This document shows positions 33,437 through 64,000 of a stretch of DNA of 64,000 nt, piece after piece. How positions within the stretch are numbered: position 1 is the stretch's first letter; each line of letters starts with the position of its first letter. Under the pieces are notes generated by a model. That model saw only the letters and a program-made list of their open reading frames with translations, made no database searches and was not told the DNA's origin. The translations under genes and the position numbers were made by a program. The stretch covers positions 255,335-319,334 of the IMG/VR virus record IMGVR_UViG_3300024239_000013; one strand, 5' to 3'.

Positions 33437-34408
33437 TTATAAATTGAAATATTTACTATTATAGACATCTTCTATCCCGACCGAAACCGCACCTACACTA
33501 GAGCATGCGATAGATCCAGCTATATTACATAATTTTAAAGATTCTTTTATATCCAACCCAGAAGAAAAACATAAAGATATCATAGCGGTAACGGTATCAC
33601 CAGCACCCGAAACGTCGGAAATTTTCACAGGATATGAAGGAGAGTGATATGATTCATTAGCAGTGATGAAAATTACCCCATTTTCTGATAAGGTGACTAG
33701 TATAGATTCTATACCTAATTTAGATATAATATTCCTTCCCTCATAAACTATGGAATCGAAATCATTGGGACTCAATTTTTTATTGATTAAACTACAAAAC
33801 TCTAAGAAATTGGGTTTAATCAAAGTACAACCGCTATATGAATCAAAATTTTTTAATTTAGGGTCTACTAATACTGGCTTATTTTTTTCCTTGCAAATTT
33901 TTATAATTCCCTTTATAAGTACAGAGGTTAATAATCCTTTATTATAGTCCTCCATAATAACACAATCATAAAAATCTATAACGGATTCTATTTTTGATAA
34001 TATAATAGATTCTAAATTACTATCAATATCAATTATATCCTCATTATCAACTCTTAATAATTGATGAGAATTTGAAATGTATCTTGATTTAGTAGTTGTC
34101 TTTATTCCCGACCTTTTTATAAGAAGGCTGAGATCAGATTTTTCTGAAACCAAACTTTCTACCTTATCTCCATTAAGATCATTTCCTATAACAGAAATAA
34201 TATCGCTATATCCACCTAAAGAATGAATGTTTAGAAAAACATTACCTGCCCCTCCTAAATAGTAATTTTCAGATTTATTTAATAATACCGGTACTGGAGC
34301 TTCTGGGGATATTCTAGATACGATTCCATTTACATAATGGTCTAGCATGATATCTCCAATGACCAATATTTTAAGTCTGGAAAAAATATCCCTGATGTCT
34401 AGATTCAT
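33437..34408 (-). CDS. hldE: HldE/RfaE-type D-glycero-D-manno-heptose-7-phosphate kinase (stand-alone kinase domain)
   Basis: VIGDIMLDHY..G.VSRISPEAPVPV, GGAGNV, QLLRVD, DYNKG, VDPK, DVSGAGDTV. Confidence 0.88.
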   Translation of the reverse strand: MNLDIRDIFSRLKILVIGDIMLDHYVNGIVSRISPEAPVPVLLNKSENYYLGGAGNVFLNIHSLGGYSDIISVIGNDLNGDKVESLVSEKSDLSLLIKRSGIKTTTKSRYISNSHQLLRVDNEDIIDIDSNLESIILSKIESVIDFYDCVIMEDYNKGLLTSVLIKGIIKICKEKNKPVLVDPKLKNFDSYSGCTLIKPNFLEFCSLINKKLSPNDFDSIVYEGRNIISKLGIESILVTLSENGVIFITANESYHSPSYPVKISDVSGAGDTVTAMISLCFSSGLDIKESLKLCNIAGSIACSSVGAVSVGIEDVYNSKYFNL

Positions 34409-38829: not shown

Positions 38830-39189
38830 TTAAATATTATATGAATTATCATCACCAGTGATATAGCTAAATGGTATAGTTTTAGGATTTTTAGGGGGAT
38901 GTAATTTTTTCCATCCCTTAGCAAATCCATTTTTAGCAATCTGTGTAAAATAAGCAAATGGATTATTAGACTTTTCAGGATTGAATCGATTCCAATATTT
39001 ACAGAGATCTTCCATAGCAAAGGCCATACAATCTTCTTTATCTTCTGGATCTTTATATGACATTTTCTTAGCTATACCGTTTATCATTAAGGTAAACATT
39101 TCTATAGTTTCCGGTGTCAGCTTACCGGCTTTCTTTGATTCTATTACAGCAAGCATAAGCTCACTATTTTTAACATATTCTTTTGCCAT
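38830..39189 (-). CDS. gp55: Late-transcription sigma factor (gp55-like); start reassigned to ATG 39189 (MAKEYV)
   Basis: YVKNSEL, KYWNRFNPEKSNNPFAYFTQI. Confidence 0.85.
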   Translation of the reverse strand: MAKEYVKNSELMLAVIESKKAGKLTPETIEMFTLMINGIAKKMSYKDPEDKEDCMAFAMEDLCKYWNRFNPEKSNNPFAYFTQIAKNGFAKGWKKLHPPKNPKTIPFSYITGDDNSYNI

Positions 39190-39216
39190 TAATTGTTTAA
39201 TTAGTTTGGATTTATA

Positions 39217-39244
39217 TTCTAGTATAAAAAATGGTAAATATTTC
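39217..39244 (-). promoter_or_regulatory. ECF-type promoter GAAAT-N17-CTAGAA upstream of gp55
   Basis: Same spacing and -10 as the other copies. Confidence 0.6.
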
Positions 39245-39246
39245 AT

Positions 39247-39283
39247 AAAAAAAGAATGTAGCTTTTTGGTTACATTCTTTTTT
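39247..39283 (-). terminator. Intrinsic terminator
   Basis: aaaaaagaatgta-N10-tacattctttttt 13-bp stem. Confidence 0.75.
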
Positions 39284-39441
39284 ATTTTTATTCCTTTCTT
39301 CTCCGGTTTCGTCTGCATCCGAATCGTCTTTTATTTCTTTTCCATCTGGTGCCTTACTTAATTTTCCTTCCGAAGATTGAACGAAGGGTTCACCCGGTTT
39401 ATTTTGATCTTCCGATTTTGGAGCAAAATAAAAGTTACGAC

Positions 39442-41851: not shown

Positions 41852-41862
41852 TATATATCCAA
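41852..41862 (-). promoter_or_regulatory. Late promoter TTGGATATATA
   Basis: Exact 11-mer upstream of ATG 41829. Confidence 0.7.
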
Positions 41863-46099: not shown

Positions 46100-46127
46100 T
46101 TATATCATCGTAAATCTTTATTGTTTC
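46100..46127 (-). promoter_or_regulatory. ECF-type promoter GAAAC-N17-ATATAA
   Basis: 13 nt upstream of ATG 46086. Confidence 0.6.
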
Positions 46128-46726
46128 TCGTCTATTTTTTTTCTGATTTTACTGCGAGCTCTTCTGATCCTTGTAGCGATGGATCTTTTCTTTATCCCAT
46201 ATTTTTCTGCAATGTCCTTATATTTCATATTGTTTATCTCTCGGTCGATCATAATGTCTCTGTATAACTCTGGGAGATCTCTAATCTCATCCAGAACGGA
46301 TTCATAAAACTCATCAAAAGTAGATTCCTCCTTATAGAATGCATACAAAGGATCCTCTTCTAAAACATACTGTCCTCCTATCTCATTGGATTCGTTTTTT
46401 GAAGAAAGATATTCGAGTTCAGCATCAGTGTGATTGTGATATCTTTTTCTGGACTTCATTAAGAGGAGAGATTCATTTCTTGCTATATTATAACACCAAG
46501 TTGAAAAATTTCCTCTTTCATTGTTATACTGGTCTATTTTTATCCAAATTTTAGACATGGTATTAATGAAAGCATCTTCAGCAAGTTCCTGTTCTTTTAC
46601 AATCAAAAAACAATGGTTTAGTATACCAGGTCGGAGTCTCTCGAATAAAATTTTAAAATTCTTATCATTTTTCACAGTTATGAAATCCTCAGCTATCTTT
46701 TGGATATTCTTTTCTTTTTGTTGCAT
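46118..46726 (-). CDS. ECF-family (sigma-24-like) RNA polymerase sigma factor
   Basis: Region 2 AEDAF...NFSTWCYNIARN; region 4 LPELYR...MKYKDIAE..GI...IATRIRRAR. Confidence 0.9.
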   Translation of the reverse strand: MQQKEKNIQKIAEDFITVKNDKNFKILFERLRPGILNHCFLIVKEQELAEDAFINTMSKIWIKIDQYNNERGNFSTWCYNIARNESLLLMKSRKRYHNHTDAELEYLSSKNESNEIGGQYVLEEDPLYAFYKEESTFDEFYESVLDEIRDLPELYRDIMIDREINNMKYKDIAEKYGIKKRSIATRIRRARSKIRKKIDEKQ

Positions 46727-46729: not shown

Positions 46730-47335
46730 TTAAAATTGGTTTTTTATTTTACTGTTTGAAAATTTTACTATTTCTATATTGGCTTCTACCAAGAACGATA
46801 AAGATTCAGGTTTTCTATAAACCTCTGAAAAAATAACTCTCTTTATACCAGATTGGATTATTAGTTTAGAACACTCATAACAGGGAGAAAGAGTTACATA
46901 TAAACTAGAACCCTCAGAACTCTGAGTTCCCTTCGCTAGCTTAGTTATCGCATTAGCTTCTGCGTGTAATACATAAGGAAGAGTTATATTATCCACATTT
47001 TCACAAATGTTCGGGAACCCTGTAGGAGATCCGTTATATCCGTCCGATATTATCGATTTGTCTTTAACTATTAAACATCCAACTTTCATTCGATTGCAAT
47101 GAGAATTTTTAGACCAAACCGAAGCCATTTCCAGGTAAATTGAATCTTTTTTATCCGTTACTTCCGAAAATTCACGATCGGACAATTCAGATTCAGAATA
47201 GAATACTTCTAATTTTTTATCTTCGTTAGTTTTAACCGACCAAAAGGGTAAAGACAGAAAATCATCCGTCATAAAAGACATGTCATCACAGACTCGTCTA
47301 TTAACATTTTCTGTAATTTTTATAGATTTTAACAT
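46730..47335 (-). CDS. dCMP deaminase
   Basis: KVGCLIVKD, DGYNG, LHAEANAI, LSPCYECSKLIIQSGI. Confidence 0.92.
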   Translation of the reverse strand: MLKSIKITENVNRRVCDDMSFMTDDFLSLPFWSVKTNEDKKLEVFYSESELSDREFSEVTDKKDSIYLEMASVWSKNSHCNRMKVGCLIVKDKSIISDGYNGSPTGFPNICENVDNITLPYVLHAEANAITKLAKGTQSSEGSSLYVTLSPCYECSKLIIQSGIKRVIFSEVYRKPESLSFLVEANIEIVKFSNSKIKNQF

Positions 47336-50285: not shown

Positions 50286-50861
50286 TTACAAGAAAAGGTC
50301 TTCCCAATAATCACAAACCCAACTAGTTGTTATTGTATAGATAGTTGCTTGTTCATAGTCTAGTTCCATGGGATTTATAGCTTCACTCAAGAAACATGAG
50401 GGTATTCTTATTCTCCTAAAAACATCCCCTCTTTTATTAAAGATTGATATTGAGATAGATCCTACATAGTCTGCTTTTATCCCCATTGCACCTGTAAGAG
50501 GATTATAAATTAAATCTGACCATTGTCTAAGTATTTTATAAACGCTCATCGAATTAGCATCATTTAAGTTAACCTCAAATTCCATGGTCAATGTCATATC
50601 ACTTTGAGAAGGTTCTCCCCCTGCATATCTTCTTGTTGCAAACTTATAGTTTTGGTTAATAGTCTGTGCAGGAGCAATATCAACAGCTAACCCTGTTATA
50701 GATTTAACTTGTTGTGCTAATATTCCCTCCCCATTAAATGCCGTTGTTGCATCTAAAATACCAGCAGGAGGATTTATAATAACTTCAAACTGGTTCAAAA
50801 ATACCGGTTCATAGTTATTTATTGCTGCTTTAGAATTCGTAAAATGTGGTAATCCTGCCAT
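50286..50861 (-). CDS. Tail tube protein paralog 2 (gp19-like)
   Basis: MAGLPHF, LRQWSDLIYNPLTG, W.CDYWEDLFL. Confidence 0.85.
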   Translation of the reverse strand: MAGLPHFTNSKAAINNYEPVFLNQFEVIINPPAGILDATTAFNGEGILAQQVKSITGLAVDIAPAQTINQNYKFATRRYAGGEPSQSDMTLTMEFEVNLNDANSMSVYKILRQWSDLIYNPLTGAMGIKADYVGSISISIFNKRGDVFRRIRIPSCFLSEAINPMELDYEQATIYTITTSWVCDYWEDLFL

Positions 50862-50878: not shown

Positions 50879-51433
50879 TTATAGGAATAAATCTTCCCAA
50901 TAATCAACCGCCCAAGTCATATCGTCAATTTTATATAAATCGGTAGAGGTATAATTTAAATTCATAGGAGATATTGGTTTAGTAGGAAAGCAATCCTTAC
51001 ATGTTATTCTTCTAAAAACGTCTCCTTGTTTATTAAAAATCGATATAACTATAGTTCCCGTATAGTCGCTTTTAATGCCCATTGCACCAGTCAATGGATT
51101 ATAAATCAAATCTGACCATTGTCTTAATGTTTTGAAAACATACATAGAGTTAGCATCATTAAGGTTTACAGTAAAACTTAAACTAACGTCCATAAATGTA
51201 TTTTCGGGTTTAGCTCCAGCATAATTTCTTTTAGCAAATTTATACTTTTGGCTAGTTACTCCGGGATTCTTATCTAAAGAAAGTCCGCTAACCTTAGTAA
51301 CATGTTGGAGTAATATTTCACCACCAGCTACAGCAGCAGGAGGTATTATTGTTACCTCGAACTGGTTCAGATAAACAGGTTCAAATTTGTTTATAGCTGA
51401 AAGTGAATTTTGAAAATGTGATAGTCCTGCCAT
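50879..51433 (-). CDS. Tail tube protein paralog 1 (gp19-like)
   Basis: MAGLSHF, LRQWSDLIYNPLTG, WAVDYWEDLFL. Confidence 0.85.
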   Translation of the reverse strand: MAGLSHFQNSLSAINKFEPVYLNQFEVTIIPPAAVAGGEILLQHVTKVSGLSLDKNPGVTSQKYKFAKRNYAGAKPENTFMDVSLSFTVNLNDANSMYVFKTLRQWSDLIYNPLTGAMGIKSDYTGTIVISIFNKQGDVFRRITCKDCFPTKPISPMNLNYTSTDLYKIDDMTWAVDYWEDLFL

Positions 51434-51477: not shown

Positions 51478-54400
51478 TTATACAAATTGTATAAATCCTC
51501 CTGATGATATTCCTCCTGTTTTACTAACAGTAAGTCTGTTGATGAATTTTTGAATTCCTTTTGCAGGTTCAACAATAACATCAATTATACCCATATTCAT
51601 ATCTATGATTGAAGGGGTGTTATTAGAAGCATCCATAATAGTCTGATATGCATAAATACCTCCTCCTGCTCTAACTCCATCAAGATAATTATCAACTAAA
51701 GTTTTTATCTCAAGTCTGATTGTGTCTTCATTGAAATCAAAAAGATAATTAGCTAGAATTTCTTGTACGTCAGTTTCGATACTAATTAAAAGATCTCTAA
51801 CATGTATAAGATTAAAAGCAGAGTTAACTTGTTGATAAGCAGTTTGGTTACCATAGATGGCTACACCAACCCCTCTTCTTTTTATAATTGGATTGATACC
51901 AAAAGGCTCTAAATTACCTCTATCTTCTTCATCGAAATCATATTCAACCCCTACTATATTAGATCCGCTTATTAAACCTCTTTTTTGACCAGCAATGATA
52001 GCATAAGGTTCTCCGTTAGAAAATTTTCTAAGGAAATTGTTAGAAACAAATGCTGCAGGAGGAACGTTTATATTTCTATTTCCCTCTCTTACTGTTATGT
52101 ATGGAGCATAGAAACCACAGAATTTAGCTCCATCTTCTTCGCTAGGTAAGCTGAAAGTGTAGGTTGGATTTAATGATAAATTACCTCCTTCCGTAATATA
52201 AGCTGTATTTAGCTTAGGATATGGGTTTACAGAAGTAGGAGCATCGGTAAATCTAGGGTCTGTACTAGCTCTAAATTGTTCCATAGAAGGAGCATTTATA
52301 ATAGCAAGTGCTTGTTGTCTTAGTTTAGCAAGTCTACTTAATTGATATTTAGAATTAGGTAGAATTTGACCAGAGAATGTGTCTACAATATATCTAAATG
52401 ATATAACGTCTTTAGAGGATAAAGTTTTAGCTATGTTTGTGTTGTACATAACATCTAAAATCTCTGATATTCTCGCGTCTGTTCCGTTAGGTCTATGCCA
52501 ATCATTCATACTAAATCCTGAAAGATATGAGAAATCAAAAGATCTAGTAAATTGAGCAATAGATGCAAATTTTTGAACTCTGACCCCATTAGCAGTAGAA
52601 TAGTATAATACAGGTCTTGAAGAAACTACTTTATAAATACCTGCTGTACTAGTTCTTGAAACTGATGTAATTTTAGCTAATCTATTTTGTCTGTTTCCAT
52701 TAACATTTTCACAAACATCCAAGTCTGTAGATACTACCAAGTCACCTACAGAAAATGGAACATTACCGTTCAAATCTAATCCAATAGTGAACGTATTAAC
52801 ATCTATTCTTGTACAATCAATAAATTGATTAATGGAACCATTTTTAGAAACGATATCAAATTTCTGAGTGTCTACTGGATATCCAATATTATCTGAAGCA
52901 TATGTCGTGCCAAAAGAAGGAACGTCTGTTATCGTAGCATCATCTAGATCTACATTGCTATAAGCCCTAGTATAAACTAGATTAAATTGGTCTCTATCTA
53001 CTGTAGATTCAAACCCCAAATATCTAACTTGCGTTCCTGCAGAGTTAATCCAAGCAAGATCCCCTGTAGTAATTTCCGAATATTTATGATCCTGATAAAG
53101 TTGGGATGCATTATAAGCTAAGATTGCATTAGAAATACCCAAAGGTGCTCCAGGCCCAGTTATTCCATTAGGTGTAAATATACTTTCTATATTAACATAA
53201 TCCGAATTACCAAATTGATAAGCTTTAGCGTAGAACGGTTGGCTACTTCCCGATGCTCCTGTATTATAAGAATTTAAATTATAAGTAGGGGTAACGGTTA
53301 TACCCTGAGATCTATAGAAAGGAGTATCTAAAGGATGTGTGAAATAAATTCTAAGTGCTCCAGAAACCTCCTTAGTTCCAGTAACTTTAAGTTTAACTAT
53401 ACTTGCTTCAGAGAATTGATTTATTAATGCACCTGTTAATCCCCCAGTGTATCCTGAAACTACTCCTAGTATAAATTTCTGATCGTTTGAAGAGGTAACA
53501 CTTAAGAAACTTTTAAGTTCAGCAACATCTGTATTATTTTGGATGTAACCTGCGGTAACACCATAAGTAGTTTTAGTTTGCAAATAATGTAAACCACTAT
53601 CATAAGCAGAAGGATCATAGATTTCAAAAGAATCAGAAACGATCCCTGCAGTAGCTCCTTCGGAACCGGTTAAAGTAAATAAAGTACCAACTTTAGTTCC
53701 TGTAGTAAATACAGTTGCTCCAGTTGGACTAGTAAATCCAGTAGCACCAGTTACACCAACTACTTTTTGAGAGTATAAGTAATCTGCAACTAAAACCTGG
53801 TCATAACTTAAGAAATTGATCTTTGGTGTTTTAAGGTCTCTGTCTCCTGTTAATTCATCAATTAAGTGGTTACCAACTAAATCTATTCTAGATGTATTTT
53901 GACAAATGCTATCAAATGCTTGTTCATCAATAGCACAGAATAACCCAGTTGACGGAGTATTATTATTAACTAGTGTTTGTATATACTGATTAACTCCATT
54001 TAAATCAACGAAATCTGGAATTATACATCCAGTAACATTCGTAACAATAGAAACATCAGGATCGTTTAGAAATTGATCAATTCTATCTTTTATAAATCCA
54101 TTATTGGTAAAATATTTACTCCATTTCGGATCTATTGAAAGTGCTTGATAATTTGTCCAGTTACCATAAACTGCTATAACATCAATAAAATAATCAGATA
54201 TGTAATCATAAGGGTGCATGAAACTAGGAACATTATCAGCACCATACCAATCTATTGCGAAAATATCATAACCTTTAAGCGGCTTATTAGAATCTGTAGA
54301 TTTTCTAACTATTACGCTCATAGGTGATTTACCGAGATTCGTTAAATTAAACAATTTACCTTGGTCTTCTACGCTTAGTGTTGCAAGGAAATAATTTGGA

Positions 54401-54831
54401 TCTGCAAACCAGAATCTCTCCTTATTATAATAAGAAGAATAAAGTCTGCTTGTTACAACACCATTATTTTCTTCAGTGTCAATTGAATATGATTGATATG
54501 TTGCTTTATCTGGGTTAGATGATTCTTCGTCGTCATTTAATCTTAATAGATTTAACGCAAAGACTGGTCCAGTATTTAGACATGTTAATATTGACCTTTG
54601 AAAGAAAGATCCTTTATTTTCTAGTGATCTATCGACGTCACCGAAAATAGATATAAGAGTTGTTACGTCTGGAATATAGACTGGTGTATTGAACGGTCCC
54701 TTATTAGAGAATCCTACAACTAATCTGATAGTCTGAGATGTTAATATTACATTTTGAGTTGTCTCAAATTCCAATGTATAAACTCCAGATGCTCTAAATT
54801 GAGAGTAGTCTATTTTTACCTTATTTGCCAT
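51478..54831 (-). CDS. gp18: Contractile tail sheath (gp18-like) with large insertion
   Basis: SGVYTLE, GFS.KGPFNTP, VPPAAFV, GINPI, GNQT, IHVRDLLI, VEPAKGI. Confidence 0.92.
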   Translation of the reverse strand: MANKVKIDYSQFRASGVYTLEFETTQNVILTSQTIRLVVGFSNKGPFNTPVYIPDVTTLISIFGDVDRSLENKGSFFQRSILTCLNTGPVFALNLLRLNDDEESSNPDKATYQSYSIDTEENNGVVTSRLYSSYYNKERFWFADPNYFLATLSVEDQGKLFNLTNLGKSPMSVIVRKSTDSNKPLKGYDIFAIDWYGADNVPSFMHPYDYISDYFIDVIAVYGNWTNYQALSIDPKWSKYFTNNGFIKDRIDQFLNDPDVSIVTNVTGCIIPDFVDLNGVNQYIQTLVNNNTPSTGLFCAIDEQAFDSICQNTSRIDLVGNHLIDELTGDRDLKTPKINFLSYDQVLVADYLYSQKVVGVTGATGFTSPTGATVFTTGTKVGTLFTLTGSEGATAGIVSDSFEIYDPSAYDSGLHYLQTKTTYGVTAGYIQNNTDVAELKSFLSVTSSNDQKFILGVVSGYTGGLTGALINQFSEASIVKLKVTGTKEVSGALRIYFTHPLDTPFYRSQGITVTPTYNLNSYNTGASGSSQPFYAKAYQFGNSDYVNIESIFTPNGITGPGAPLGISNAILAYNASQLYQDHKYSEITTGDLAWINSAGTQVRYLGFESTVDRDQFNLVYTRAYSNVDLDDATITDVPSFGTTYASDNIGYPVDTQKFDIVSKNGSINQFIDCTRIDVNTFTIGLDLNGNVPFSVGDLVVSTDLDVCENVNGNRQNRLAKITSVSRTSTAGIYKVVSSRPVLYYSTANGVRVQKFASIAQFTRSFDFSYLSGFSMNDWHRPNGTDARISEILDVMYNTNIAKTLSSKDVISFRYIVDTFSGQILPNSKYQLSRLAKLRQQALAIINAPSMEQFRASTDPRFTDAPTSVNPYPKLNTAYITEGGNLSLNPTYTFSLPSEEDGAKFCGFYAPYITVREGNRNINVPPAAFVSNNFLRKFSNGEPYAIIAGQKRGLISGSNIVGVEYDFDEEDRGNLEPFGINPIIKRRGVGVAIYGNQTAYQQVNSAFNLIHVRDLLISIETDVQEILANYLFDFNEDTIRLEIKTLVDNYLDGVRAGGGIYAYQTIMDASNNTPSIIDMNMGIIDVIVEPAKGIQKFINRLTVSKTGGISSGGFIQFV

Positions 54832-54860: not shown

Positions 54861-54870
54861 TATATATCAA
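54861..54870 (-). promoter_or_regulatory. Late promoter TTGATATATA
   Basis: 29 nt upstream of the sheath ATG. Confidence 0.65.
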
Positions 54871-57524: not shown

Positions 57525-60014
57525 TTATCTATTTCTTGCAAATTTAGGAATATTTAATAAAGGCTTAGCATTATCTATAATGTGAGCCAAATGTGCATCT
57601 CTAATTATATTTTGATTTAATACTGTTGATTGATTATCTATATCTATCATATTTTTAAATAATCTAACATTTCCTACGTATATAGGACCAGTAAATATCT
57701 TATAAGAGTTATTGTCTGTTCCGTAATAAGGACTTGAGTTATCGTTATCTATATCAGGATTAGCTTTAAAAATCATTGGAGAATTCATCATTCTTACATC
57801 TTCATGAAGCTTTTCTAATTTACTAGATTGATCTGACGAATTTACAGGATCATAAGTCATTCCCCATATATTAGCAGCAATCTGTTTATAAACATTGGAT
57901 ACATTTACAACAACTCCGTACCAGCTACCATATTCGGGTACAAATTGTAACGGCGAATTTACTATCTTATTATTAATTCTTACTACTAAACTTCCCTGTT
58001 CTAAAAAGTTGTTAGCAGTATCATCAATTACACCAGAGTGTATTAAATCCACTCTAATTCCCTTTATTGAGCTATTTTCGTCTAAGTGTAATCCACTTAT
58101 TAAATTTCTACTTTGTGCTTTTTGCATTTTCCAAACAATAGTTCCTTGGGAAAATGTTTCTGAATTATTCTTAATTTTAAATCTATATTCGTCTGAAACT
58201 TCAAGAACCTCATATCCTCCCGAATGTAGTTTATCACCTTTTATAGCAACATATCCCTCAGGATTACTATCATACGATTCCCATTTTTTTAAATTGTGTT
58301 TTTTAGGATAAGTGTTAAAATATAAATAATCAGGATCATATGATTCTAGTGTTAGATTTAGTATAGGATAAGGTCTTCTTAACATTTGTTGATTATCATA
58401 GAAATTTCTGAGGTTAAACCAACATGTATAAGAAATTTCGCCAGTAGGACCGAGTTCTGGAAGAATCTTATATCTTACTGCATTTCTATATCTATAAGGA
58501 TCGTATTTAAATTCTGAATCGTCTGCAAAAGCACCGGAAAGATCATAATAATTATTAAGTACTATTGTCCAGTTATTATTAAGATCGTATTCAATTATAG
58601 GGAGATCTTTATAAACATAAGATCTAGTTGGATCCTGTGACATTTGATTTATGGTAGTAGCATACTGCTGTGGTTTTGCTATTTTTGTCCCTTCTTCTCT
58701 GATTTCGTCACCAAATAGTTTCTCAGTAGTTAGAGTTATACCATCCAATTCCTCCTTATATGCAGGATCTTGAAAATATGTATTGCTTTTAGGACTGTAT
58801 TTTTTAAGTTCAATCTTAAAATATACGGGAGCATTCATAAAATCTCTAAACAAGTAAGTTGAATTTATCTCATAAATTCTATTAGTTAGTGGAAAATATA
58901 TGATGTCTCTTTTTCTAGGTTGTGAACCCCTTCCGAATATACTTTCGAAATATTTTTTATCTATTTGTATTTCAAAAGGCTCGTCGAACTGTAATCCGAA
59001 AGGATCAAAATTTATCTTATTATCAGGAAATTGATTTTGTGGAACTAGAACTTTCACACATTTCTCATCAACTACATTAAAGATGGTATATTCTTTTAAT
59101 ATTACATCCTTTCCTCTTGCCTGTGGTTGAACTGAATAATAATTTGCCTCTAATCCAAATAAATTATTAACCATTAAGCTAAGGTCCTGGTACATATTTA
59201 GCGCTTTGTTTACAGCATAAGGATTGAATGTAAATTTACAATCTGAAAATATTACAGGTCTATTTGAAATTTCATTAGAACATATAGCAGCAGGTTTAAA
59301 AATGACAGTTTCAACATCAGCAGCATATTCTAAATCAAGATCAAAATTAACTATTACGATGCTAGGATCTATTGGTTCTTCTGTATTATAAACTATTGTC
59401 CCATCAGGATTCACTAAAACTGAGGTAAATCTAAATTCCGGATAGAATTTATTAGCTGGGTCTAAATTTATATCAAAAAGGTCAGAAAACTCGTTGGTTA
59501 TTCCACCTAGAGCGGTTCCCACATTCGTCCAAAGAGACCACGTTTTCCCGTCTATACTATATCTAAAATCTATAGAAATATCATTAGAATCTAGTCTAGA
59601 ACCGGAATTATTACTATTCGACGCATCTATTATCCATCCATTAAACTTACTAACATTTACGAAAGGCTTATCCCAACTTAATATTCTATAATTACCTATG
59701 TACGTGAAATTAAGAGCACTATCGAGTTGCTCCATCCTGGTTTCATAATAATCAGGGGAAGAACAAGGCTTATAATAAGTCTTTCCATCAATTAAAACCT
59801 CATGATATCCACCACAACCTATTTGTTTTGCCCTCGCTTCTGCTGAATCTGGTGTAGAATATAAGTTGTCAACAGATGATTCTTTTATTTTAGTAGTGTT
59901 TTCTAATCCGTCATGATAATTATATCTATTATCTGACAATTCGTACTGTTCCCCGTTACCGTTTTTAATAGGGAATCCTTTTTTTGGAAATTTATCTTCT
60001 GGGTAAAAATTCAT
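57525..60014 (-). CDS. Neck protein (gp14-like core) with extra N- and C-terminal domains
   Basis: FGLQFDEPFEI.I.K.YF...PRKRDIIYFPLTNRIYEI; N-terminal AEARAKQIGCGGYH...YKPC. Confidence 0.65.
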   Translation of the reverse strand: MNFYPEDKFPKKGFPIKNGNGEQYELSDNRYNYHDGLENTTKIKESSVDNLYSTPDSAEARAKQIGCGGYHEVLIDGKTYYKPCSSPDYYETRMEQLDSALNFTYIGNYRILSWDKPFVNVSKFNGWIIDASNSNNSGSRLDSNDISIDFRYSIDGKTWSLWTNVGTALGGITNEFSDLFDINLDPANKFYPEFRFTSVLVNPDGTIVYNTEEPIDPSIVIVNFDLDLEYAADVETVIFKPAAICSNEISNRPVIFSDCKFTFNPYAVNKALNMYQDLSLMVNNLFGLEANYYSVQPQARGKDVILKEYTIFNVVDEKCVKVLVPQNQFPDNKINFDPFGLQFDEPFEIQIDKKYFESIFGRGSQPRKRDIIYFPLTNRIYEINSTYLFRDFMNAPVYFKIELKKYSPKSNTYFQDPAYKEELDGITLTTEKLFGDEIREEGTKIAKPQQYATTINQMSQDPTRSYVYKDLPIIEYDLNNNWTIVLNNYYDLSGAFADDSEFKYDPYRYRNAVRYKILPELGPTGEISYTCWFNLRNFYDNQQMLRRPYPILNLTLESYDPDYLYFNTYPKKHNLKKWESYDSNPEGYVAIKGDKLHSGGYEVLEVSDEYRFKIKNNSETFSQGTIVWKMQKAQSRNLISGLHLDENSSIKGIRVDLIHSGVIDDTANNFLEQGSLVVRINNKIVNSPLQFVPEYGSWYGVVVNVSNVYKQIAANIWGMTYDPVNSSDQSSKLEKLHEDVRMMNSPMIFKANPDIDNDNSSPYYGTDNNSYKIFTGPIYVGNVRLFKNMIDIDNQSTVLNQNIIRDAHLAHIIDNAKPLLNIPKFARNR

Positions 60015-60033: not shown

Positions 60034-60042
60034 TATATATCC
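60034..60042 (-). promoter_or_regulatory. Late-promoter motif GGATATATA
   Basis: 19 nt upstream of the neck-terS-terL run. Confidence 0.6.
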
Positions 60043-60053: not shown

Positions 60054-61256
60054 TTAGAATGAATTTTGAGTGTAATTAGAATTTACCCAATCGATTATGG
60101 AAAGATATACATCTTCAGGTTTTATTGTTTTTGTACATTCAAAAGCTCTTTCGGTTCCTTTATGCAAAGGACACCACCACCAATCACCCCTATCAAATTT
60201 ATATTTGGGGTCAGTAAAGCAACCATGACAAACGTTTTTATTTATAATCCTTAAGCATTTGTCGGAAAATTCTAAAAAAGGATCTGTAAATCCAGATATC
60301 ATAACAGTTGGAATTCCTAGTCCCCAAGATAACCAAGAAAGACCTGAACTTAATCCTATAAAGAAATCACAATTCAAAAGGTCACTTATTCTATCCTCAA
60401 GAGGGAAATCCCCACTCTTATCGACTACTCCTTTTAATTTGGTTTCTCCTTTTTGTATAACCACAACTTCATAACCAGAAAATTTCAGAAGATCTACTAG
60501 TCTTTGCCATCCGCCAGGATAGTGCCAAAATTTTGAACCTGCGGTAGATTCGGTAGCTATACAAACATATTTTTTATCAAAAATTTTATTTTTCTCTCTC
60601 CTATTGATTTTAGGTCTAATTTCTCCAATATAATCAACCCCCAGTATATCACTACATACTTTTTGTAGAGGAATGCTTCTGGGATCGTTTATATGAACGT
60701 TTCTATCATCCTCTTCATACCATCCTATACCGATAACAACTTTCGTTCCTGGTTCTCTGTGGCCTGGAGGTTTAAATTTAATTTCGGGATACATCGAATC
60801 GAAAAGTTCATTATAGAAAGTAGTAACAGTTAGATCCATAACTCCATATTTTTTTCTAAATTCCTCAATATAAGGAACCCATGCTATAGTATCACCTAGA
60901 GATGAACTATCTATAGAGATACAAACCTTGCCGGTTTTTAGGTAATCGTAAAGATGAAATTCAGAGATTAATATTTTATCAGAATTATAGACTTCTATTA
61001 TGCAATTATAGATTCCCCTTTTAAATGCACTGGAGAACATATTATGAGATAGCTTAGCACCATATAATTCTTTGTTACCATCTCTTATAATGACGAAAAA
61101 ATAATCATCCGGATTTTCAGATCTTCCTGAAATATAAACTCTGGGATAATAATCAAACCAACAATGAACGTCAGTTTTTAGATTGTCACTTACAAAAATA
61201 TTTTCTGACTTTTCTATATCAGAATAAATTGAAATTGAATTTTTACTTATTTCCAT
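60054..61256 (-). CDS. TibC/Aah-type (autotransporter) protein O-heptosyltransferase
   Basis: SSSLGDTIAW.PY.EEF, KYVCIA, K.W..P.GW..LV, FIGLSSGLSWL, MISGFT, VCHGCF...FDRGDWWWCP.HKGT...FECTKTI. Confidence 0.82.
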   Translation of the reverse strand: MEISKNSISIYSDIEKSENIFVSDNLKTDVHCWFDYYPRVYISGRSENPDDYFFVIIRDGNKELYGAKLSHNMFSSAFKRGIYNCIIEVYNSDKILISEFHLYDYLKTGKVCISIDSSSLGDTIAWVPYIEEFRKKYGVMDLTVTTFYNELFDSMYPEIKFKPPGHREPGTKVVIGIGWYEEDDRNVHINDPRSIPLQKVCSDILGVDYIGEIRPKINRREKNKIFDKKYVCIATESTAGSKFWHYPGGWQRLVDLLKFSGYEVVVIQKGETKLKGVVDKSGDFPLEDRISDLLNCDFFIGLSSGLSWLSWGLGIPTVMISGFTDPFLEFSDKCLRIINKNVCHGCFTDPKYKFDRGDWWWCPLHKGTERAFECTKTIKPEDVYLSIIDWVNSNYTQNSF

Positions 61257-62215
61257 TACACGTTTAATAATTTTAAAATTAAAGAAACGTTAAATGCTTT
61301 ATCCGAACTTAAATAGTGAACATTTTTCATATTGTCATACATATCCAAATAAGTCGGTAGTTTCTTTATAACAGTAGGCAAATTCCAAGAAAGAGATTCC
61401 TTTATTGAAAGAGGATTTAATTCAAAATTTGATGTAAATAAAAATAAATCTGATGCTTGATAGAACAAATCGACATCGGATCTTTCTCCCCATATATGAC
61501 AATTAGAAGGCACATCAGAGACCAAAGGTTCCCAATAATCTCTAAAATTATCTGCAAGATTACCAACAAAATGGAATATGATCTGGGTCTCTAAATTCAT
61601 ATTTAAAATTTCTCTAGCATACTCAAAAATCTCAGATTGATTTTTTCCAGGTGTAAAAAGACCAACGTTTACGATATGTTTATATTTTGGATTAAAACCT
61701 AAAAATTCCATACATTTTGATTTTTCAGCCTTTAATTCCTCTATCGGATATTCGAGAATAATTGAAGGTATTCCTAGCACTTTGAATTTTTCATCGTTCC
61801 ACTTAGAAACCATTACAAAAAGATCAGGTTTGTAAATTTTACTAGAAACCTCAGTTACCGAACTATGACAACTTTCTACTATTTTATATTTTCTATCTTT
61901 AGAAAATATTTTTAGAAGAATCTCATCAGGAACAAAGCTTTCACAAAACTCTTCAAAATGAATTACGTCTGGGTTTATTTTTTCTATAGTCTCATAAAGT
62001 AAAGCCCCGTCACTAAAAATGGGGATAAATCTATCCCCTAATAATTCTTTTATTCTGTTCCTTTGTACTACATATGCATCTCCAAGATAATCATATTCCA
62101 CACAATATACTTCTCCGACATCATTAAAGACTTCTATTTTTTTCCAAAGATATTGTGGTAATCCACCAGTAGAAAGATGTGGGGATATGTATAATATTTT
62201 TAATTTATCCTGCAT
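61256..62215 (-). CDS. GT4-family glycosyltransferase
   Basis: SPHLSTGGLPQY, NVGLFTPGKNQ, WGERSDVD.FYQASDLF, ELNPLSIKE. Confidence 0.85.
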   Translation of the reverse strand: MQDKLKILYISPHLSTGGLPQYLWKKIEVFNDVGEVYCVEYDYLGDAYVVQRNRIKELLGDRFIPIFSDGALLYETIEKINPDVIHFEEFCESFVPDEILLKIFSKDRKYKIVESCHSSVTEVSSKIYKPDLFVMVSKWNDEKFKVLGIPSIILEYPIEELKAEKSKCMEFLGFNPKYKHIVNVGLFTPGKNQSEIFEYAREILNMNLETQIIFHFVGNLADNFRDYWEPLVSDVPSNCHIWGERSDVDLFYQASDLFLFTSNFELNPLSIKESLSWNLPTVIKKLPTYLDMYDNMKNVHYLSSDKAFNVSLILKLLNV

Positions 62216-62232
62216 ATTTAGATTTAAAGAAA

Positions 62233-62505
62233 TTATCCCTTTGTATATACGCCAGTAGCAAAATCTAATTTACCCTCACCATATTGATTTACTACCTTTA
62301 CTTGTAAATCCTCCTCCATTTTAGAAATAGCCTCTGCTTTTGAATAAAGTGATTCTAATTCAGCATTAATCATTTCCAGATCCTTTTCATAAAATCTTTT
62401 TTGTACATTTAATCTACCTATCGCAATGACATTTTCGGTTAATTCGTTTTTTACGTCTTGAATTTCGGATAACAATTCATTAGGCAATTGAATACTTTCG
62501 CTCAT
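62233..62505 (-). CDS. Small coiled-coil protein
   Basis: 90 aa ending YGEGKLDFATGVY. Confidence 0.6.
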   Translation of the reverse strand: MSESIQLPNELLSEIQDVKNELTENVIAIGRLNVQKRFYEKDLEMINAELESLYSKAEAISKMEEDLQVKVVNQYGEGKLDFATGVYTKG

Positions 62506-62522
62506 ATTTTTAATTTTTTATA

Positions 62523-62550
62523 TTCTATAACATGAAAATGAAATAGTTTC
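62523..62550 (-). promoter_or_regulatory. ECF-type promoter GAAAC-N17-ATAGAA
   Basis: Heads the 90-aa, GT4, heptosyltransferase run. Confidence 0.6.
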
Positions 62551-62566
62551 GTGTTATAGAATAATA

Positions 62567-63405: not shown

Positions 63406-64000
63406 TTAAAATTTATTATAATATTTGTTGTAATTAGATGTTGGTAAATTAGAAAGATTTGAAGGTATTAGTGTATCTGTCCCAATAACATTAGGATTGT
63501 CTACTCTTGATAATTCAAGTATTTGTGAGGAAAAATATTGAGCAAAATAAATCTTTCCATTAGGGGCTAATACTCCTCCATTCCATTTAAAACTTGAAGT
63601 ATATTCTGTACCAACTAGCTGAGTTGTGTTTGTTGTTGGATTTAATTCAAGTATTTGTGTGGCATTATATGGAGCAAAATAAATCTTTCCATTAGGAGCT
63701 AATACTCCTCCGCGCCATTTAGAACCTCCAGTATATGTTGTACCAACTAACTGTGTTGTATTTGTTGTTGGATTTAATTCAAGTATTTGTGAGGAAAAAT
63801 ATGGAGTAAAATAAATCTTTCCATTAGGGGCTAATACTCCTCCCTCCCATTTAAAAAGTGTAATATCTTCTGTACCAACTAGCTGAGTTGTGTTTGTTGT
63901 TGGATTTAATTCAAGTATTTGTGTGGCATTATATGGAGCAAAATAAATCTTTCCATTAGGAGCTAATACTCCTCCGCGCCATTTAGAACCTCCAGTATAT
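63406..64000 (-). CDS. Partial ORF (enters from the window edge): beta-propeller-like repeat protein, probably tail/adsorption related
   Basis: Hand translation gives four 44-aa units KWxGGVLAPNGKIYFxPY..xQILELNPTTNTTQLVG, ending YNKF-stop at 63406. Confidence 0.75.
   Translation of the reverse strand, partial: YTGGSKWRGGVLAPNGKIYFAPYNATQILELNPTTNTTQLVGTEDITLFKWEGGVLAPNGKIYFTPYFSSQILELNPTTNTTQLVGTTYTGGSKWRGGVLAPNGKIYFAPYNATQILELNPTTNTTQLVGTEYTSSFKWNGGVLAPNGKIYFAQYFSSQILELSRVDNPNVIGTDTLIPSNLSNLPTSNYNKYYNKF
63505..64000 (-). repeat. 132-bp tandem repeats arranged as a near-identical 264-bp doublet
   Basis: 63961-64000 is identical to 63697-63736; units alternate A-B-A-B. Confidence 0.9.

What the first reader, a model, noticed from the sequence alone, without database searches (positions are those of the whole stretch)
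60054..62550. Phage-encoded protein O-heptosylation system (TibC/Aah-type transferase, GT4, HldE kinase)
Seen: a 400-aa protein with the TibC/Aah signature including the Cys cluster (CHGC...WCP.H...FEC), abutting a GT4 gene in one run under a shared promoter motif, between the tail-fibre and neck genes; a heptose kinase lies at 33437. Known: TibC/Aah are iron-containing enzymes that transfer heptose from ADP-heptose to Ser residues of bacterial autotransporter adhesins, and ADP-heptose is the ALPK1-TIFA agonist. Inference: the phage heptosylates its own fibres, capsid or sheath (shielding or adhesion) or host surface proteins (superinfection exclusion), with GT4 extending or adding sugars. I know of no characterised phage example, but cannot check the literature here.
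Basis: partly seen in the sequence, partly recalled or inferred. Interest (0 to 1): 0.85.

Follow-up and report, generated by a model that had tools for sequence, protein, structure and literature searches.

The report
Phage TibC-like glycosyltransferase pair beside neck gene
A giant uncultured phage carries, inside its virion-gene block, a cousin of the bacterial enzyme that puts heptose sugars on adhesins, always partnered with a second sugar transferase, which suggests that many environmental phages sugar-coat one of their own particle proteins.

Summary
ORF 60054-61256(-) is a full-length TibC/Aah-type enzyme: TIGR04414 at 253.6 bits (cutoff 200), and an AF2 model matching TibC at TM 0.82-0.84. 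The catalytic Asp, the ADP-heptose contact residues and the four iron-finger Cys are all present. Its start overlaps the stop of a GT4 gene (TAATG). ORF 33437-34408(-) is a heptose-7-phosphate-kinase-like PfkB.

The protein lacks the beta-hairpin thumb that builds the TibC dodecamer. It sits in a sister clade that never neighbours AIDA-type autotransporters, whereas 43 of 64 thumb-bearing bacterial enzymes do. The kinase lies 26 kb away, occurs in only 21 of 71 related loci, and does not track the transferase pair. No other heptose-pathway gene is in the window.

New findings: at least 582 IMG/VR contigs encode relatives. At least 60 of 80 sampled loci have a GT4 homologue alongside or fused. 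In two myophage lineages the pair abuts a neck or sheath gene and a conserved ~85-90-aa coiled-coil protein. Variable sulfo- and methyltransferases lie upstream.

Best reading: late-expressed O-glycosylation of a virion protein, probably from ADP-heptose. Acceptor and donor are unproven. This is a new variant of a known kind.

The parts
60054..61256 (-). TibC/Aah-like GT9-type glycosyltransferase of 400 aa: N-terminal beta-barrel, GT-B core, four-Cys iron finger, but no beta-hairpin thumb.
   Evidence: TIGR04414 at 253.6 bits against a cutoff of 200. PDB TibC at E 4e-49. AF2 model with pLDDT 91 matches 4rap at TM 0.82-0.84, against about 0.5 for WaaF and WaaC. D122, T238, K242, R289, W308, C343, C346, C362 and C374 are conserved. 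The thumb segment is 21 aa, against 30 aa in bacterial BAHTs.
61256..62215 (-). GT4-family retaining-type GT-B glycosyltransferase of 319 aa, translationally coupled to the TibC-like gene.
   Evidence: Pfam Glycos_transf_1 at E 1e-8 and phrog_2170. TAATG stop/start overlap. AF2 model with pLDDT 91; best PDB matches are BshA, HepE, a PBCV NY2A glycosyltransferase, MshA and PimA at TM 0.65-0.75. E265 and E273, spaced as in an EX7E motif, are invariant. Homologues are fused to TibC-like domains in L367, L162, L189, Mel-JY01, P0084 and P0092.
62233..62505 (-). p90, a 90-aa helical, coiled-coil-like protein with a conserved C-terminal YGEGKLDF.TG motif. It is the first gene of the three-gene run and occupies the position that wac (fibritin) has in the T4 gene order.
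   Evidence: Conserved immediately upstream of GT4 in the whole syntenic clade. Homologues of 82-85 aa lie between the TibC-like gene and the sheath gene in a second myophage lineage (E 4e-9 to 1e-4). It persists beside the neck gene where the transferase pair is absent. Its relatives form viral-only clusters.
57525..60014 (-). 829-aa neck (head-closure) protein with a gp14-like core, the invariant downstream neighbour and a candidate acceptor.
   Evidence: Pfam T4_neck-protein at E 4e-6 and phrog_679 head closure Hc2. It follows the TibC-like gene in the relatives fetched through that gene.
33437..34408 (-). [quoted passage not shown] It is an accessory gene between the portal and DNA ligase genes.
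   Evidence: TIGR02198 at 315.6 bits against a cutoff of 345, while the next family, ribokinase, scores 75 bits. PDB HldA 4e84 at E 1e-48. The GAGD motif is invariant. Present in 21 of 71 related loci.
63409..63999 (-). C-terminal part of a repeat protein with 44-aa units containing the Thr-rich loop NPTTNTTQ, cut by the contig end. Possible fibre or receptor-binding protein and candidate acceptor.
   Evidence: Translation. The 132-nt unit occurs 3.7 times, with a 264-nt super-repeat at 96% identity. Weak DUF5074 hit. Found only in this contig among fetched loci.
60034..60041 (-). Copy of the recurrent gene-strand motif GATATATA (candidate phage promoter element), located in front of the neck gene.
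   Evidence: All 16 copies are on the minus strand, against 8.7 expected on both strands. Many copies lie in intergenic gaps upstream of genes.

Best explanation
The run p90 - GT4 - TibC-like is a virion-associated protein O-glycosylation cassette of a huge T4-like myophage. Proposed mechanism, with shown and inferred steps marked. The cassette lies in the same-strand run of virion genes, so it is presumably transcribed with the neck, terminase, sheath and tube genes (position shown; late timing inferred). The TibC-like enzyme keeps the GT-B active site of TibC, with catalytic base D122 and ADP-heptose contacts T238, K242, R289 and W308 (shown by alignment and model). It would therefore transfer a sugar from an ADP-sugar, most likely ADP-glycero-manno-heptose, to Ser/Thr hydroxyls of a folded phage structural protein in the host cytoplasm (inferred). 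At the position of TibC Pro300 it has Ser, as in AAH, so it may accept both the D,D and L,D epimers (inferred from the published P300S swap). It lacks the thumb, so it probably works as an iron-finger-mediated dimer and not as a dodecameric ring, and it must recognise its acceptor differently from TibC (inferred). The coupled, sometimes fused GT4 adds or extends a second sugar (inferred). In relatives, variable upstream sulfotransferases, an APS kinase and FkbM methyltransferases tailor the glycan (inferred from gene content). The acceptor is unknown. Candidates, from gene adjacency, are p90 (the only neighbour shared by both phage lineages), the neck protein, the sheath and fibre-like repeat proteins. 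The HldE-like kinase, where present, is an accessory gene that would boost host ADP-heptose supply. It is not an obligate part of the cassette.
For: Family and chemistry: TIGR04414 above cutoff. Full-length fold match to TibC, far above WaaC and WaaF. The catalytic, donor-binding and Fe-binding residues are invariant or nearly so across 44 homologues, and their roles are defined in PMC4358343.

Coupling to GT4: the TAATG overlap. A GT4 homologue lies within 6 kb in at least 60 of 80 IMG/VR loci. Single-polypeptide GT4 + TibC-like fusions occur in a close relative (L367), in the cultured Microcystis phage Mel-JY01 and in P0084 and P0092.

Virion context: the order p90 - GT4 - TibC-like - neck - 260 aa - TerL - sheath - tube - tube is kept down to about 46% identity of the TibC-like protein. 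A second myophage lineage has GT4(-FkbM) - TibC-like - p90-like - sheath. The phage clade is monophyletic (SH-aLRT 99).

Glycan tailoring genes lie upstream in relatives: two sulfotransferases, an APS kinase and FkbM in L005, a methyltransferase-like gene in L033, and a large GT/MT array in L032.

Bacterial BAHT genes usually sit beside their acceptor gene (43 of 64), so adjacency is a reasonable guide to the acceptor. A heptose-7-phosphate-kinase-like gene is in the same genome and in several close relatives. Virion glycosylation by phage glycosyltransferases has a precedent in mycobacteriophages (Freeman et al. 2023, as cited in PMC12619734).
Against: No glycosylated acceptor was identified. 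There is no AIDA-like repeat protein in the window or in any phage locus, and no window protein is conspicuously Ser-rich. TibC thumb mutants are dimeric and inactive on TibA, so a thumbless enzyme could behave quite differently. The kinase does not co-vary with the transferase pair, and the other heptose-pathway genes are absent from the window. The donor could therefore be another ADP-sugar, or host-made ADP-heptose only. Some relatives have p90 - neck without the pair, so the cassette is dispensable for particle assembly. Late expression is inferred from position only. Phage DNA-glycosylation clusters can also lie among structural genes. The host and its ability to make ADP-heptose are unknown.
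Confidence: 0.45

Rival explanations
1. The pair remodels the host cell surface and not the virion. The TibC-like enzyme and GT4 would glycosylate host envelope proteins or glycolipids during infection, masking receptors (superinfection exclusion, or preventing progeny from being trapped on debris). The variable sulfo- and methyltransferases would diversify that surface glycan.
For: Phage glycosyltransferases that alter host serotype are a known class (general statement in PMC12619734). Thumbless relatives also occur in bacterial chromosomes, outside any phage, beside DUF6502 and small CarboxypepD_reg/collagen-like proteins. L032 places a TibC-like gene in a large polysaccharide-type GT/MT/epimerase array. 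The cassette is dispensable in some relatives, as accessory host-modifying genes are.
Against: Known members of the family act on cytoplasmic protein acceptors before export. No signal for membrane or lipid-carrier chemistry was found (no Wzx/Wzy, polyprenyl transferase or ligase in the window). The fixed position between p90 and the neck or sheath genes, in two lineages of large and presumably lytic myophages, is unusual for a host-conversion gene.
Confidence: 0.2
2. The enzymes glycosylate non-virion proteins in the infected cytoplasm, either host proteins (takeover, or inactivation of a defence or translation factor) or phage non-structural proteins. The position among structural genes would be incidental.
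For: The family's known chemistry is cytoplasmic protein O-glycosylation. The acceptor-recognition elements differ from TibC (no thumb), so the acceptor class is open. Mel-JY01's fusion protein gave a weak hit to a GT4 family found in conflict systems (PF20706, E 0.005).
Against: Takeover genes are normally early and clustered with other early genes. Here the synteny with morphogenesis genes holds across deep divergence. Glycan-tailoring enzymes (sulfation, methylation) point to an exposed, diversifying glycan and not to an inactivating single-sugar modification.
Confidence: 0.1
3. The GT4, the TibC-like enzyme or both hypermodify phage DNA (sugar on 5-hydroxymethyl-pyrimidine), and the kinase feeds a nucleotide-heptose donor, as in the phage clusters that put heptose on 5hmC.
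For: Phage clusters that add mono- and di-heptose to 5hmC exist. They use GT-B enzymes that resemble BshA and MshA structurally, and some lie among structural genes (Pyle et al., bioRxiv 10.1101/2023.12.21.572611). The window's GT4 model also has BshA and MshA among its best PDB matches. A near-identical relative has a 2OG-Fe(II) oxygenase two genes upstream (L001).
Against: No cytosine methyltransferase, TET/JBP-type oxygenase or dCMP hydroxymethylase was found in the 64-kb window. The L001 oxygenase hits PF13759 and PF13640, not TET_JBP, and in this window that position holds a repeat protein instead. BshA/MshA similarity is generic to GT4. No TibC-family member is known to act on DNA. The kinase does not co-vary with the pair.
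Confidence: 0.07
4. The protein is a TibC-like glycosyltransferase that no longer uses heptose. It would take another ADP-sugar such as ADP-glucose, or another nucleotide sugar, so 'heptosylation' is a misnomer even if the target is a virion protein.
For: The clade is a sister to the characterised heptosyltransferases and is not nested within them. The adenine-contacting Arg is replaced in 10 of 44 homologues, though not in this protein. 50 of 71 related loci lack the kinase in its slot. Putative hosts are Bacteroidota (misbinned phage contig L039 in a Saprospirales MAG; host predictions for comparable phages in PMC12619734), whose ADP-heptose supply is uncertain (own knowledge, unverified).
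Against: In this protein all four TibC donor-contact residues are present, including W308, which contacts a heptose hydroxyl. The next-best structural relatives, WaaC and WaaF, also use ADP-heptose. The same genome encodes a heptose-7-phosphate-kinase-like enzyme.
Confidence: 0.15

Closest known systems
Bacterial autotransporter heptosyltransferases (BAHT: TibC of ETEC, AAH of DAEC, the C. rodentium enzyme; NCBIfam TIGR04414; PDB 4RAP and 4RB4)
   Same: Same overall architecture: N-terminal beta-barrel, GT9-like GT-B core and a four-Cys iron finger (TM 0.82-0.84). Same catalytic Asp and the same ADP-heptose contacts Thr, Lys, Arg and Trp. Scores above the curated family cutoff.
   Different: The beta-hairpin thumb (TibC F265/V266) that links dimers into the dodecamer is deleted: 21 aa against 30 aa. 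It belongs to a separate clade (SH-aLRT 100). It has no AIDA-type autotransporter neighbour, whereas 43 of 64 thumb-bearing enzymes do (Fisher p 1e-13). It is encoded by phages and is coupled or fused to a GT4.
LPS inner-core heptosyltransferases WaaC and WaaF (GT9; TIGR02193; PDB 1PSW and 2H1H)
   Same: GT-B fold and the same donor class, ADP-heptose. Weak Pfam Glyco_transf_9 hit (19.8 bits).
   Different: Only 18 bits on the WaaC model against a cutoff of 185. TM 0.4-0.5. WaaC and WaaF have no beta-barrel or iron finger and take a lipid-linked acceptor.
Mycobacteriophage virion glycosylation (Freeman et al. 2023, Cell Host Microbe; seen here only as cited in PMC12619734)
   Same: Phage-encoded glycosyltransferases thought to decorate the phage's own structural proteins. 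This is the functional analogy for the best explanation.
   Different: Different enzyme families, different hosts (Actinobacteria) and no heptose. The acceptors there are the capsid and tail-tube C-termini. Nothing comparable was tested here.
Phage DNA hypermodification clusters that add heptose to 5hmC (Pyle et al., bioRxiv 10.1101/2023.12.21.572611; Cell Rep 2024)
   Same: Phage-encoded GT-B enzymes plus sugar-activating genes using heptose. Some of these clusters lie near structural genes.
   Different: They depend on 5hmC-forming enzymes, which were not found in this window. Their glycosyltransferases are T4 beta-GT/BshA-like, not TibC-like.
Viral NDP-heptose biosynthetic enzymes (Tang et al. 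2024, as summarised in PMC11573728)
   Same: The window's HldE-domain-I-like kinase belongs to this class of virus-encoded heptose enzymes. At least 558 IMG/VR contigs encode relatives.
   Different: Here it is a stand-alone kinase, with no isomerase, phosphatase or nucleotidyltransferase in the window. The physiological role of heptose in viruses is stated there to be unsolved.

Membership tests
BAHT / TibC-Aah autotransporter O-heptosyltransferase (TIGR04414) | Scores above the curated family model cutoff | tested here: met
   253.6 bits against a cutoff of 200, E 2.9e-75, covering residues 59-385.
BAHT / TibC-Aah autotransporter O-heptosyltransferase (TIGR04414) | Protomer architecture: N-terminal beta-barrel, GT-B catalytic domain and iron-finger module | tested here: met
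   AF2 model with pLDDT 91.1 and pTM 0.88. Strands 29-101 come first, then the Rossmann-like lobes. Foldseek gives 4rap at TM 0.82/0.84 over 387 columns.
BAHT / TibC-Aah autotransporter O-heptosyltransferase (TIGR04414) | Catalytic base Asp110 and ADP-heptose contacts Thr226, Lys230, Arg286 and Trp305 | tested here: met
   D122, T238, K242, R289 and W308. D, K and W are invariant in 44 homologues.
BAHT / TibC-Aah autotransporter O-heptosyltransferase (TIGR04414) | Four cysteines coordinating Fe (Cys339, 342, 358, 370) | tested here: met
   C343, C346, C362 and C374 are invariant. Iron binding itself cannot be tested here.
BAHT / TibC-Aah autotransporter O-heptosyltransferase (TIGR04414) | Beta-hairpin thumb (Phe265-Val266 tip) that assembles six dimers into the active dodecamer | tested here: not met
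   A 9-residue deletion at this point. The segment is 21 aa, against 30 aa in 64 bacterial enzymes. The model shows no hairpin at 266-285.
BAHT / TibC-Aah autotransporter O-heptosyltransferase (TIGR04414) | Genetic linkage to an AIDA-repeat (strand-loop-strand) autotransporter acceptor | tested here: not met
   phmmer with the C. rodentium and E. coli AIDA proteins finds nothing in the window or in any phage locus. 43 of 64 thumb-bearing bacterial genes have such a neighbour within 8 kb.
BAHT / TibC-Aah autotransporter O-heptosyltransferase (TIGR04414) | Transfers heptose from ADP-heptose to Ser of a protein | not testable with these tools
   Requires an enzyme assay or mass spectrometry.
LPS heptosyltransferases WaaC/WaaF (GT9) | Matches the WaaC/WaaF family models and fold | tested here: not met
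   TIGR02193 at 18.3 bits against a cutoff of 185.3. Pfam GT9 at 19.8 bits against 22. TM 0.39-0.52.
Glycosyltransferase family 4 (GT4, retaining GT-B), for ORF 61256-62215 | Glycos_transf_1 domain above cutoff, GT-B fold and a C-terminal EX7E motif | tested here: met
   35.4 bits against a cutoff of 26.4. Model pLDDT 91, with BshA, HepE, MshA and PimA at TM 0.65-0.75. E265 and E273 are invariant in 24 homologues.
[quoted passage not shown] | Scores above the equivalog cutoff; PfkB fold with a GAGD catalytic motif | tested here: inconclusive
   315.6 bits against a cutoff of 345, while ribokinase, the next family, scores 75 bits. HldA 4e84 at E 1e-48. G268-A-G-D271 is invariant. Substrate was not tested.
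Complete ADP-heptose pathway (GmhA, HldE/HldA, GmhB, HldC, HldD) | All steps encoded by the phage | tested here: not met
   Within the window, only the kinase is found, by Pfam/NCBIfam scans of all ORFs of at least 90 aa and by tblastn with the E. coli enzymes. The other 255 kb of the contig could not be read.
Phage 5hmC DNA-glycosylation clusters (Pyle et al.) | A glycosyltransferase co-located with a cytosine methyltransferase and 5mC dioxygenase, or with a hydroxymethylase | tested here: not met
   No such enzyme in the window.

The most novel reading that the evidence does not exclude
A widespread, virus-borne, thumbless branch of the TibC family, working with a fused or coupled GT4 and perhaps the small p90 protein, O-heptosylates a neck, whisker, sheath or fibre protein of large environmental myophages. 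This would be the first viral protein-heptosylation system. It would also give a physiological reason why hundreds of viral genomes encode NDP-heptose biosynthetic enzymes, and it would show a non-dodecameric mode of acceptor recognition for this enzyme family.
Probability: 0.3. Interest if true: 0.8.

Novelty: new variant of a known kind. Interest (0 to 1): 0.62.

Why it matters
Protein heptosylation is known only from bacterial adhesins, and virion glycosylation in phages only from mycobacteriophages. A recent commentary on NDP-heptose enzymes states that it is unknown why viruses make heptose. This analysis shows that a TibC-like enzyme is not a one-off in one jumbo phage. It defines a distinct clade, found in at least 582 IMG/VR contigs, fixed next to neck or sheath genes in two myophage lineages, and almost always paired or fused with a GT4. 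That turns a vague 'auxiliary glycosyltransferase' annotation into a concrete, testable hypothesis with named candidate acceptors and a cultured entry point, Microcystis phage Mel-JY01. If confirmed, it bears on phage host range and stability, on recognition of phage particles by defence or immune systems, and on how the TibC fold selects acceptors without its ring.

Tried and rejected
(1) LPS-type GT9 assignment was rejected: 18 bits on the WaaC model and TM about 0.5 or less.

(2) Classical BAHT membership was rejected as a full assignment because the thumb and the autotransporter linkage are missing.

(3) 'Transferase and kinase form one system' was tested by looking at the portal-ligase slot in 71 related loci and comparing contig names. 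The kinase is accessory and does not co-vary with the pair.

(4) A search for GmhA, GmhB, HldC and HldD in the window and in about 35 phage loci, by tblastn with the E. coli enzymes, found only one locus (L025) with an adenylyltransferase.

(5) A search for an obvious acceptor found no AIDA-like repeats and no Ser-rich outlier. The Thr-rich repeat ORF at the contig end is unique to this contig.

(6) The Mel-JY01 'cytidylyltransferase-like' neighbour was checked as a possible heptose nucleotidyltransferase. It gave only weak NMN-adenylyltransferase hits, so it is not usable as evidence.

(7) The context of thumbless bacterial relatives (DUF6502, CarboxypepD_reg-like) was uninformative about the acceptor.

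(8) The p90 atlas search returned only viral hypothetical clusters.

(9) The GT4 sequence search against the PDB found nothing. The fold search gave only generic GT4 matches.

(10) No sigma-70-type promoter or terminator enrichment was found in 56-64 kb.

(11) Whether this phage belongs to the published 'moraphages' could not be determined.

It was repeated with permitted rows only.

Full report
**What the window is.** The 64-kb window is low in G+C (about 31%), and almost every ORF lies on the minus strand. It encodes the following virion proteins:
- a T4-type major capsid protein and a prohead protease;
- two tandem portal paralogs;
- a large terminase;
- a 1117-aa sheath and two tube paralogs;
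- a gp14-like neck protein.

The terminase is closest (38-40% aa identity) to the 460-640-kb 'huge phages' and, more distantly, to Sphingomonas phage PAU and the Lak phages. The window is the last 64 kb of IMG/VR contig IMGVR_UViG_3300024239_000013 (319,334 bp), and position 64000 is the contig end.

**Check of the observation.**
- ORF 60054-61256(-) is 400 aa. It scores 253.6 bits (E 2.9e-75, cutoff 200) on NCBIfam TIGR04414, the Aah/TibC equivalog. It scores only 18.3 bits on LPS heptosyltransferase I. Against the PDB it finds only TibC, at E 4e-49.
- The alignment was read against the TibC structure paper (PMC4358343), and the key residues are present: catalytic Asp110 = D122; beta-phosphate contacts Thr226/Lys230 = T238/K242; adenine contact Arg286 = R289; heptose contact Trp305 = W308; Fe ligands Cys339/342/358/370 = C343/C346/C362/C374. 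At the position of Pro300, which makes TibC selective for the D,D epimer, the phage protein has Ser, as AAH does.
- An AlphaFold2 model built on 44 homologues (pLDDT 91.1, pTM 0.88) superposes on TibC over 387 columns at TM 0.82-0.84, including the N-terminal beta-barrel. WaaF and WaaC reach only 0.4-0.5.
- ORF 61256-62215(-) is a GT4: Glycos_transf_1 above cutoff, invariant E265 and E273 spaced as in an EX7E motif, model pLDDT 91, and generic BshA/HepE/MshA/PimA-type fold matches. Its stop overlaps the TibC-like start as TAATG.
- ORF 33437-34408(-) is the best match by far to the heptose-7-phosphate kinase domain of HldE: 315.6 bits, just below the 345 cutoff, with ribokinase next at 75 bits. 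It matches HldA 4e84 at E 1e-48.

Two side claims are weaker.
- The recurrent gene-strand motif GATATATA occurs 16 times, all on the minus strand, against 8.7 expected on both strands. Its nearest copy precedes the neck gene, not the three-gene run.
- The 'tail fibre' upstream is, in this window, only a truncated repeat ORF.

**It is not a classical autotransporter heptosyltransferase.** The pairwise alignment shows a 9-residue deletion exactly where TibC has its beta-hairpin thumb (Phe265-Val266). The thumb joins six dimers into the active dodecamer, and thumb mutants are dimeric and inactive on TibA.

I collected 112 family members from the window, phage loci, plasmids and one genome per bacterial species. 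The thumb segment falls into discrete length classes:
- 30 aa in 64 bacterial proteins;
- 20-22 aa in the window's phage clade and about 20 others;
- 26 aa in a group that includes Microcystis phage Mel-JY01;
- 32 aa in a second phage lineage.

An AIDA-repeat protein lies within 8 kb of 43 of the 64 thumb-bearing genes. Among the others this is true of only one, a second copy that sits inside the thumb clade (Fisher p 1e-13).

A maximum-likelihood tree splits the family into a thumb/BAHT side (65 rows) and a thumbless side (47 rows) with SH-aLRT 100. The 13 phage rows that share the window's synteny form one clade (SH-aLRT 99). The nearest bacterial thumbless genes (Arenicellales and other Gammaproteobacteria) pair with a DUF6502 protein and a small CarboxypepD_reg/collagen-like protein, not with autotransporters. 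The protein therefore passes the sequence, fold and active-site tests for the family, but fails two defining features of the characterised enzymes.

**Conserved context.** The order p90 (about 90 aa) - GT4 - TibC-like - 829-850-aa neck protein - about 260 aa - TerL - about 1100-aa sheath - tube - tube recurs on many contigs, several of them 150-350 kb long. This holds down to about 46% identity of the TibC-like protein. One such contig (L039) is binned in a Saprospirales MAG. That is a weak hint of a Bacteroidota host.

Only 4 of 50,697 deposited phage genomes have one.
- In the 80 best loci, a homologue of the window's GT4 lies within 6 kb in at least 60.
- The two domains are fused, in the same order as the genes here, in several proteins:
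  - L367, 711 aa, a close relative that also keeps p90 and the neck gene;
  - L162 and L189;
  - P0084 and P0092;
  - the 1226-aa protein of cultured Microcystis phage Mel-JY01, deposited as 'methyltransferase FkbM'.
- A second myophage lineage shows GT4(-FkbM) - GT4 - TibC-like - small ORF - sheath. A profile of p90 detects that small ORF at E 4e-9 to 1e-4, with the shared C-terminal motif KYGEG..(L/I)..(T/S)GEF. p90 is thus the only neighbour common to both lineages.
- p90 stays beside the neck gene in relatives that lack the pair (L364, L366, L190). The transferase pair therefore behaves as a cassette inserted next to p90.
- The gene order parallels T4's wac-13-14-15-16-17-18-19-20 (own knowledge of the T4 map). 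This puts p90 at the fibritin position. That is an untested idea.
- The genes upstream of the cassette vary:
  - in L005: two sulfotransferases, an APS kinase and FkbM;
  - in L033: a methyltransferase-like gene;
  - in L001, whose TibC-like protein is 97% identical to the window's: a 2OG-Fe(II) oxygenase, a radical-SAM/SPASM protein and two DUF6734 proteins;
  - in L004, L007 and L008: fibre-type proteins;
  - in this window: a Thr-rich 44-aa-repeat protein.

**The kinase and the donor.**
- Within the window no GmhA, GmhB, heptose-1-phosphate adenylyltransferase or HldD was found. This rests on Pfam/NCBIfam scans of all ORFs of at least 90 aa and on tblastn with the E. coli enzymes. The other 255 kb of the contig could not be read.
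- Using the adjacent portal gene as a handle, I fetched 79 related loci. Of the 71 that also show the ligase or clamp-loader gene, 21 have the kinase between portal and ligase and 50 do not.
- Five contigs without the kinase in that slot still carry GT4 and the TibC-like gene: 3300027770_000025, 3300023184_000030, 3300017917_004503, 3300028394_000072 and 3300021962_000035.
- One contig with the kinase (3300009161_006153) has p90 - neck without the pair in the 6 kb upstream.
- HldE-kinase-like genes are themselves common in IMG/VR, in at least 558 contigs.

The kinase is therefore an accessory gene. It fits heptose use by this phage but is not part of one obligate system. The donor is inferred from conserved contact residues only. 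The adenine-contacting Arg is replaced in 10 of 44 homologues, though not in this protein.

**Mechanism and rivals.** The best-supported reading (confidence 0.45) is a cassette, expressed with the virion genes, that O-glycosylates a phage structural protein in the cytoplasm.
- The TibC-like enzyme probably acts as a dimer and transfers a sugar from an ADP-sugar, most likely ADP-heptose.
- The GT4 adds or extends a second sugar.
- Variable tailoring enzymes diversify the glycan.

Rivals and their confidences:
- modification of the host surface (0.2);
- modification of non-virion cytoplasmic proteins (0.1);
- DNA hypermodification (0.07). This is a real precedent for phage heptose use, but the partner enzymes it needs were not seen here;
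- a non-heptose donor (0.15). This is an orthogonal question about the sugar, not about the target.

What is shown: family membership at the sequence, fold and active-site level; loss of the thumb; the separate clade; coupling and fusion with GT4; the fixed virion-gene context in two lineages; the accessory status of the kinase. What is inferred: the donor, the acceptor, the timing and the oligomeric state.

**Comparison with what is known, and novelty.**
- Literature searches found no paper linking phages to TibC-type enzymes.
- A huge-phage survey mentions only an LPS 'heptosyltransferase I' as an auxiliary gene.
- A paper on large aquatic phages notes four core glycosyltransferase orthogroups without resolving them.
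- UniProt already carries an automatic name, 'Glycosyltransferase Aah/TibC', for a 924-aa protein of an uncultured phage (A0A6J5SVC1). A 985-aa protein of Virus NIOZ-UU157 matches equally well. The bare presence of the domain in phages is therefore not new.
- What appears new: the definition of a thumbless, autotransporter-independent, largely phage-borne clade; its obligate GT4 partnership; its fixed place next to p90 and the neck or sheath genes; and its scale.
- A commentary on NDP-heptose enzymes states that the role of heptose in viruses is unsolved. This cassette offers a testable answer.

I rate the finding a new variant of a known kind, with interest 0.62.

Noticed in passing
window 63409-63999 (-), running off the contig end at 64000: Partial ORF made of 44-aa tandem repeats (KW.GGVLAPNGKIYF.PY...ILELNPTTNTTQLVGT). 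The 132-nt unit occurs 3.7 times, and a 264-nt super-repeat is 96% identical. It gives a weak DUF5074 (beta-propeller-like) hit. The assembly probably broke in these repeats. A phage whose TibC-like protein is 97% identical (L001) has a 2OG-Fe(II) oxygenase, a radical-SAM/SPASM protein and two DUF6734 genes at this position instead.
   Followed up: partly
window 62233-62505 (-); L175:7119-7367, L187:4535-4783 and others: p90 is a small helical protein with the conserved C-terminal motif YGEG.L.F.TG. It is adjacent to the TibC-like gene in two myophage lineages and is kept beside the neck gene when the transferase pair is absent. It sits where wac (fibritin) sits in the T4 gene order. It could be a mini-fibritin, an assembly chaperone or the acceptor.
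   Followed up: partly
window 34441-36108 (-) and 36113-37702 (-): Two tandem T4-type portal (gp20) paralogs, both full length (Pfam Portal_T4 at E 9e-64 and 4e-56). Both are conserved in about 79 related IMG/VR loci.
   Followed up: partly
window 50286-50861 (-) and 50879-51433 (-); 51478-54831 (-): Two tandem tail-tube paralogs (phrog_32623 and tail-tube PHROGs), next to an unusually long 1117-aa sheath protein.
   Followed up: no
window, 16 sites such as 8360-8367, 10180-10187, 17131-17138, 22752-22759, 41852-41859, 54861-54868, 60034-60041: The motif GATATATA occurs 16 times, always on the gene strand, and many copies lie in intergenic gaps just upstream of genes. It is a candidate phage promoter element. 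Two sigma-70-like genes (38830-39318 and 46118-46726) are in the same window.
   Followed up: partly
window 62523-62561 (-): Inverted repeat TTCTATAAC ... GTTATAGAA (9-bp stem, 21-nt loop) in the 61-nt gap upstream of p90, followed by TATAAAAAAT. It could be a regulatory hairpin or a weak terminator for the upstream genes.
   Followed up: no
L005:3323-6731 (NCBI GCA_013572995.1 contig JACCDX011479450.1) and L366:2885-3706: Relatives carry sulfotransferases, an APS kinase and an FkbM methyltransferase directly upstream of p90. In L366 a sulfotransferase is present even though the GT4/TibC-like pair is absent from the 6 kb upstream of the neck gene.
   Followed up: no
L031:4750-8430 (Microcystis phage Mel-JY01, PP395634.1): A 1226-aa protein deposited as 'methyltransferase FkbM' is in fact a multi-domain enzyme with an N-terminal GT4 and a C-terminal TibC-like module (TibC_1st plus GT9). 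It lies next to a 'structural protein' and about 7 kb from the terminase gene. It is a cultured entry point for experiments.
   Followed up: partly
L039 (CALAZP010000278.1, 'Saprospirales MAG'), also L051, L056, L058: Contigs binned into Bacteroidota MAGs. L039 carries the complete phage synteny (p90 - GT4 - TibC-like - neck - TerL - sheath), so it is a misbinned phage contig. The others carry TibC-like/GT4 genes. This is a weak hint at Bacteroidota hosts.
   Followed up: no
window 10213-11619, 26989-27891, 38338-38823, 46730-47335, 30560-31081: Other auxiliary or unusual genes: an asparagine-synthase-like amidotransferase, a UvdE UV endonuclease, a TnsA-like endonuclease, a dCMP deaminase and a guanylate kinase.
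   Followed up: no
L065-L071, L075, L078, L083, L086, L087, L105, L117 (Negativicutes genomes): Many Selenomonadales and Sporomusaceae genomes carry two tandem thumb-bearing BAHT paralogs upstream of AIDA-repeat proteins. The two copies form separate clades in the tree.
   Followed up: no
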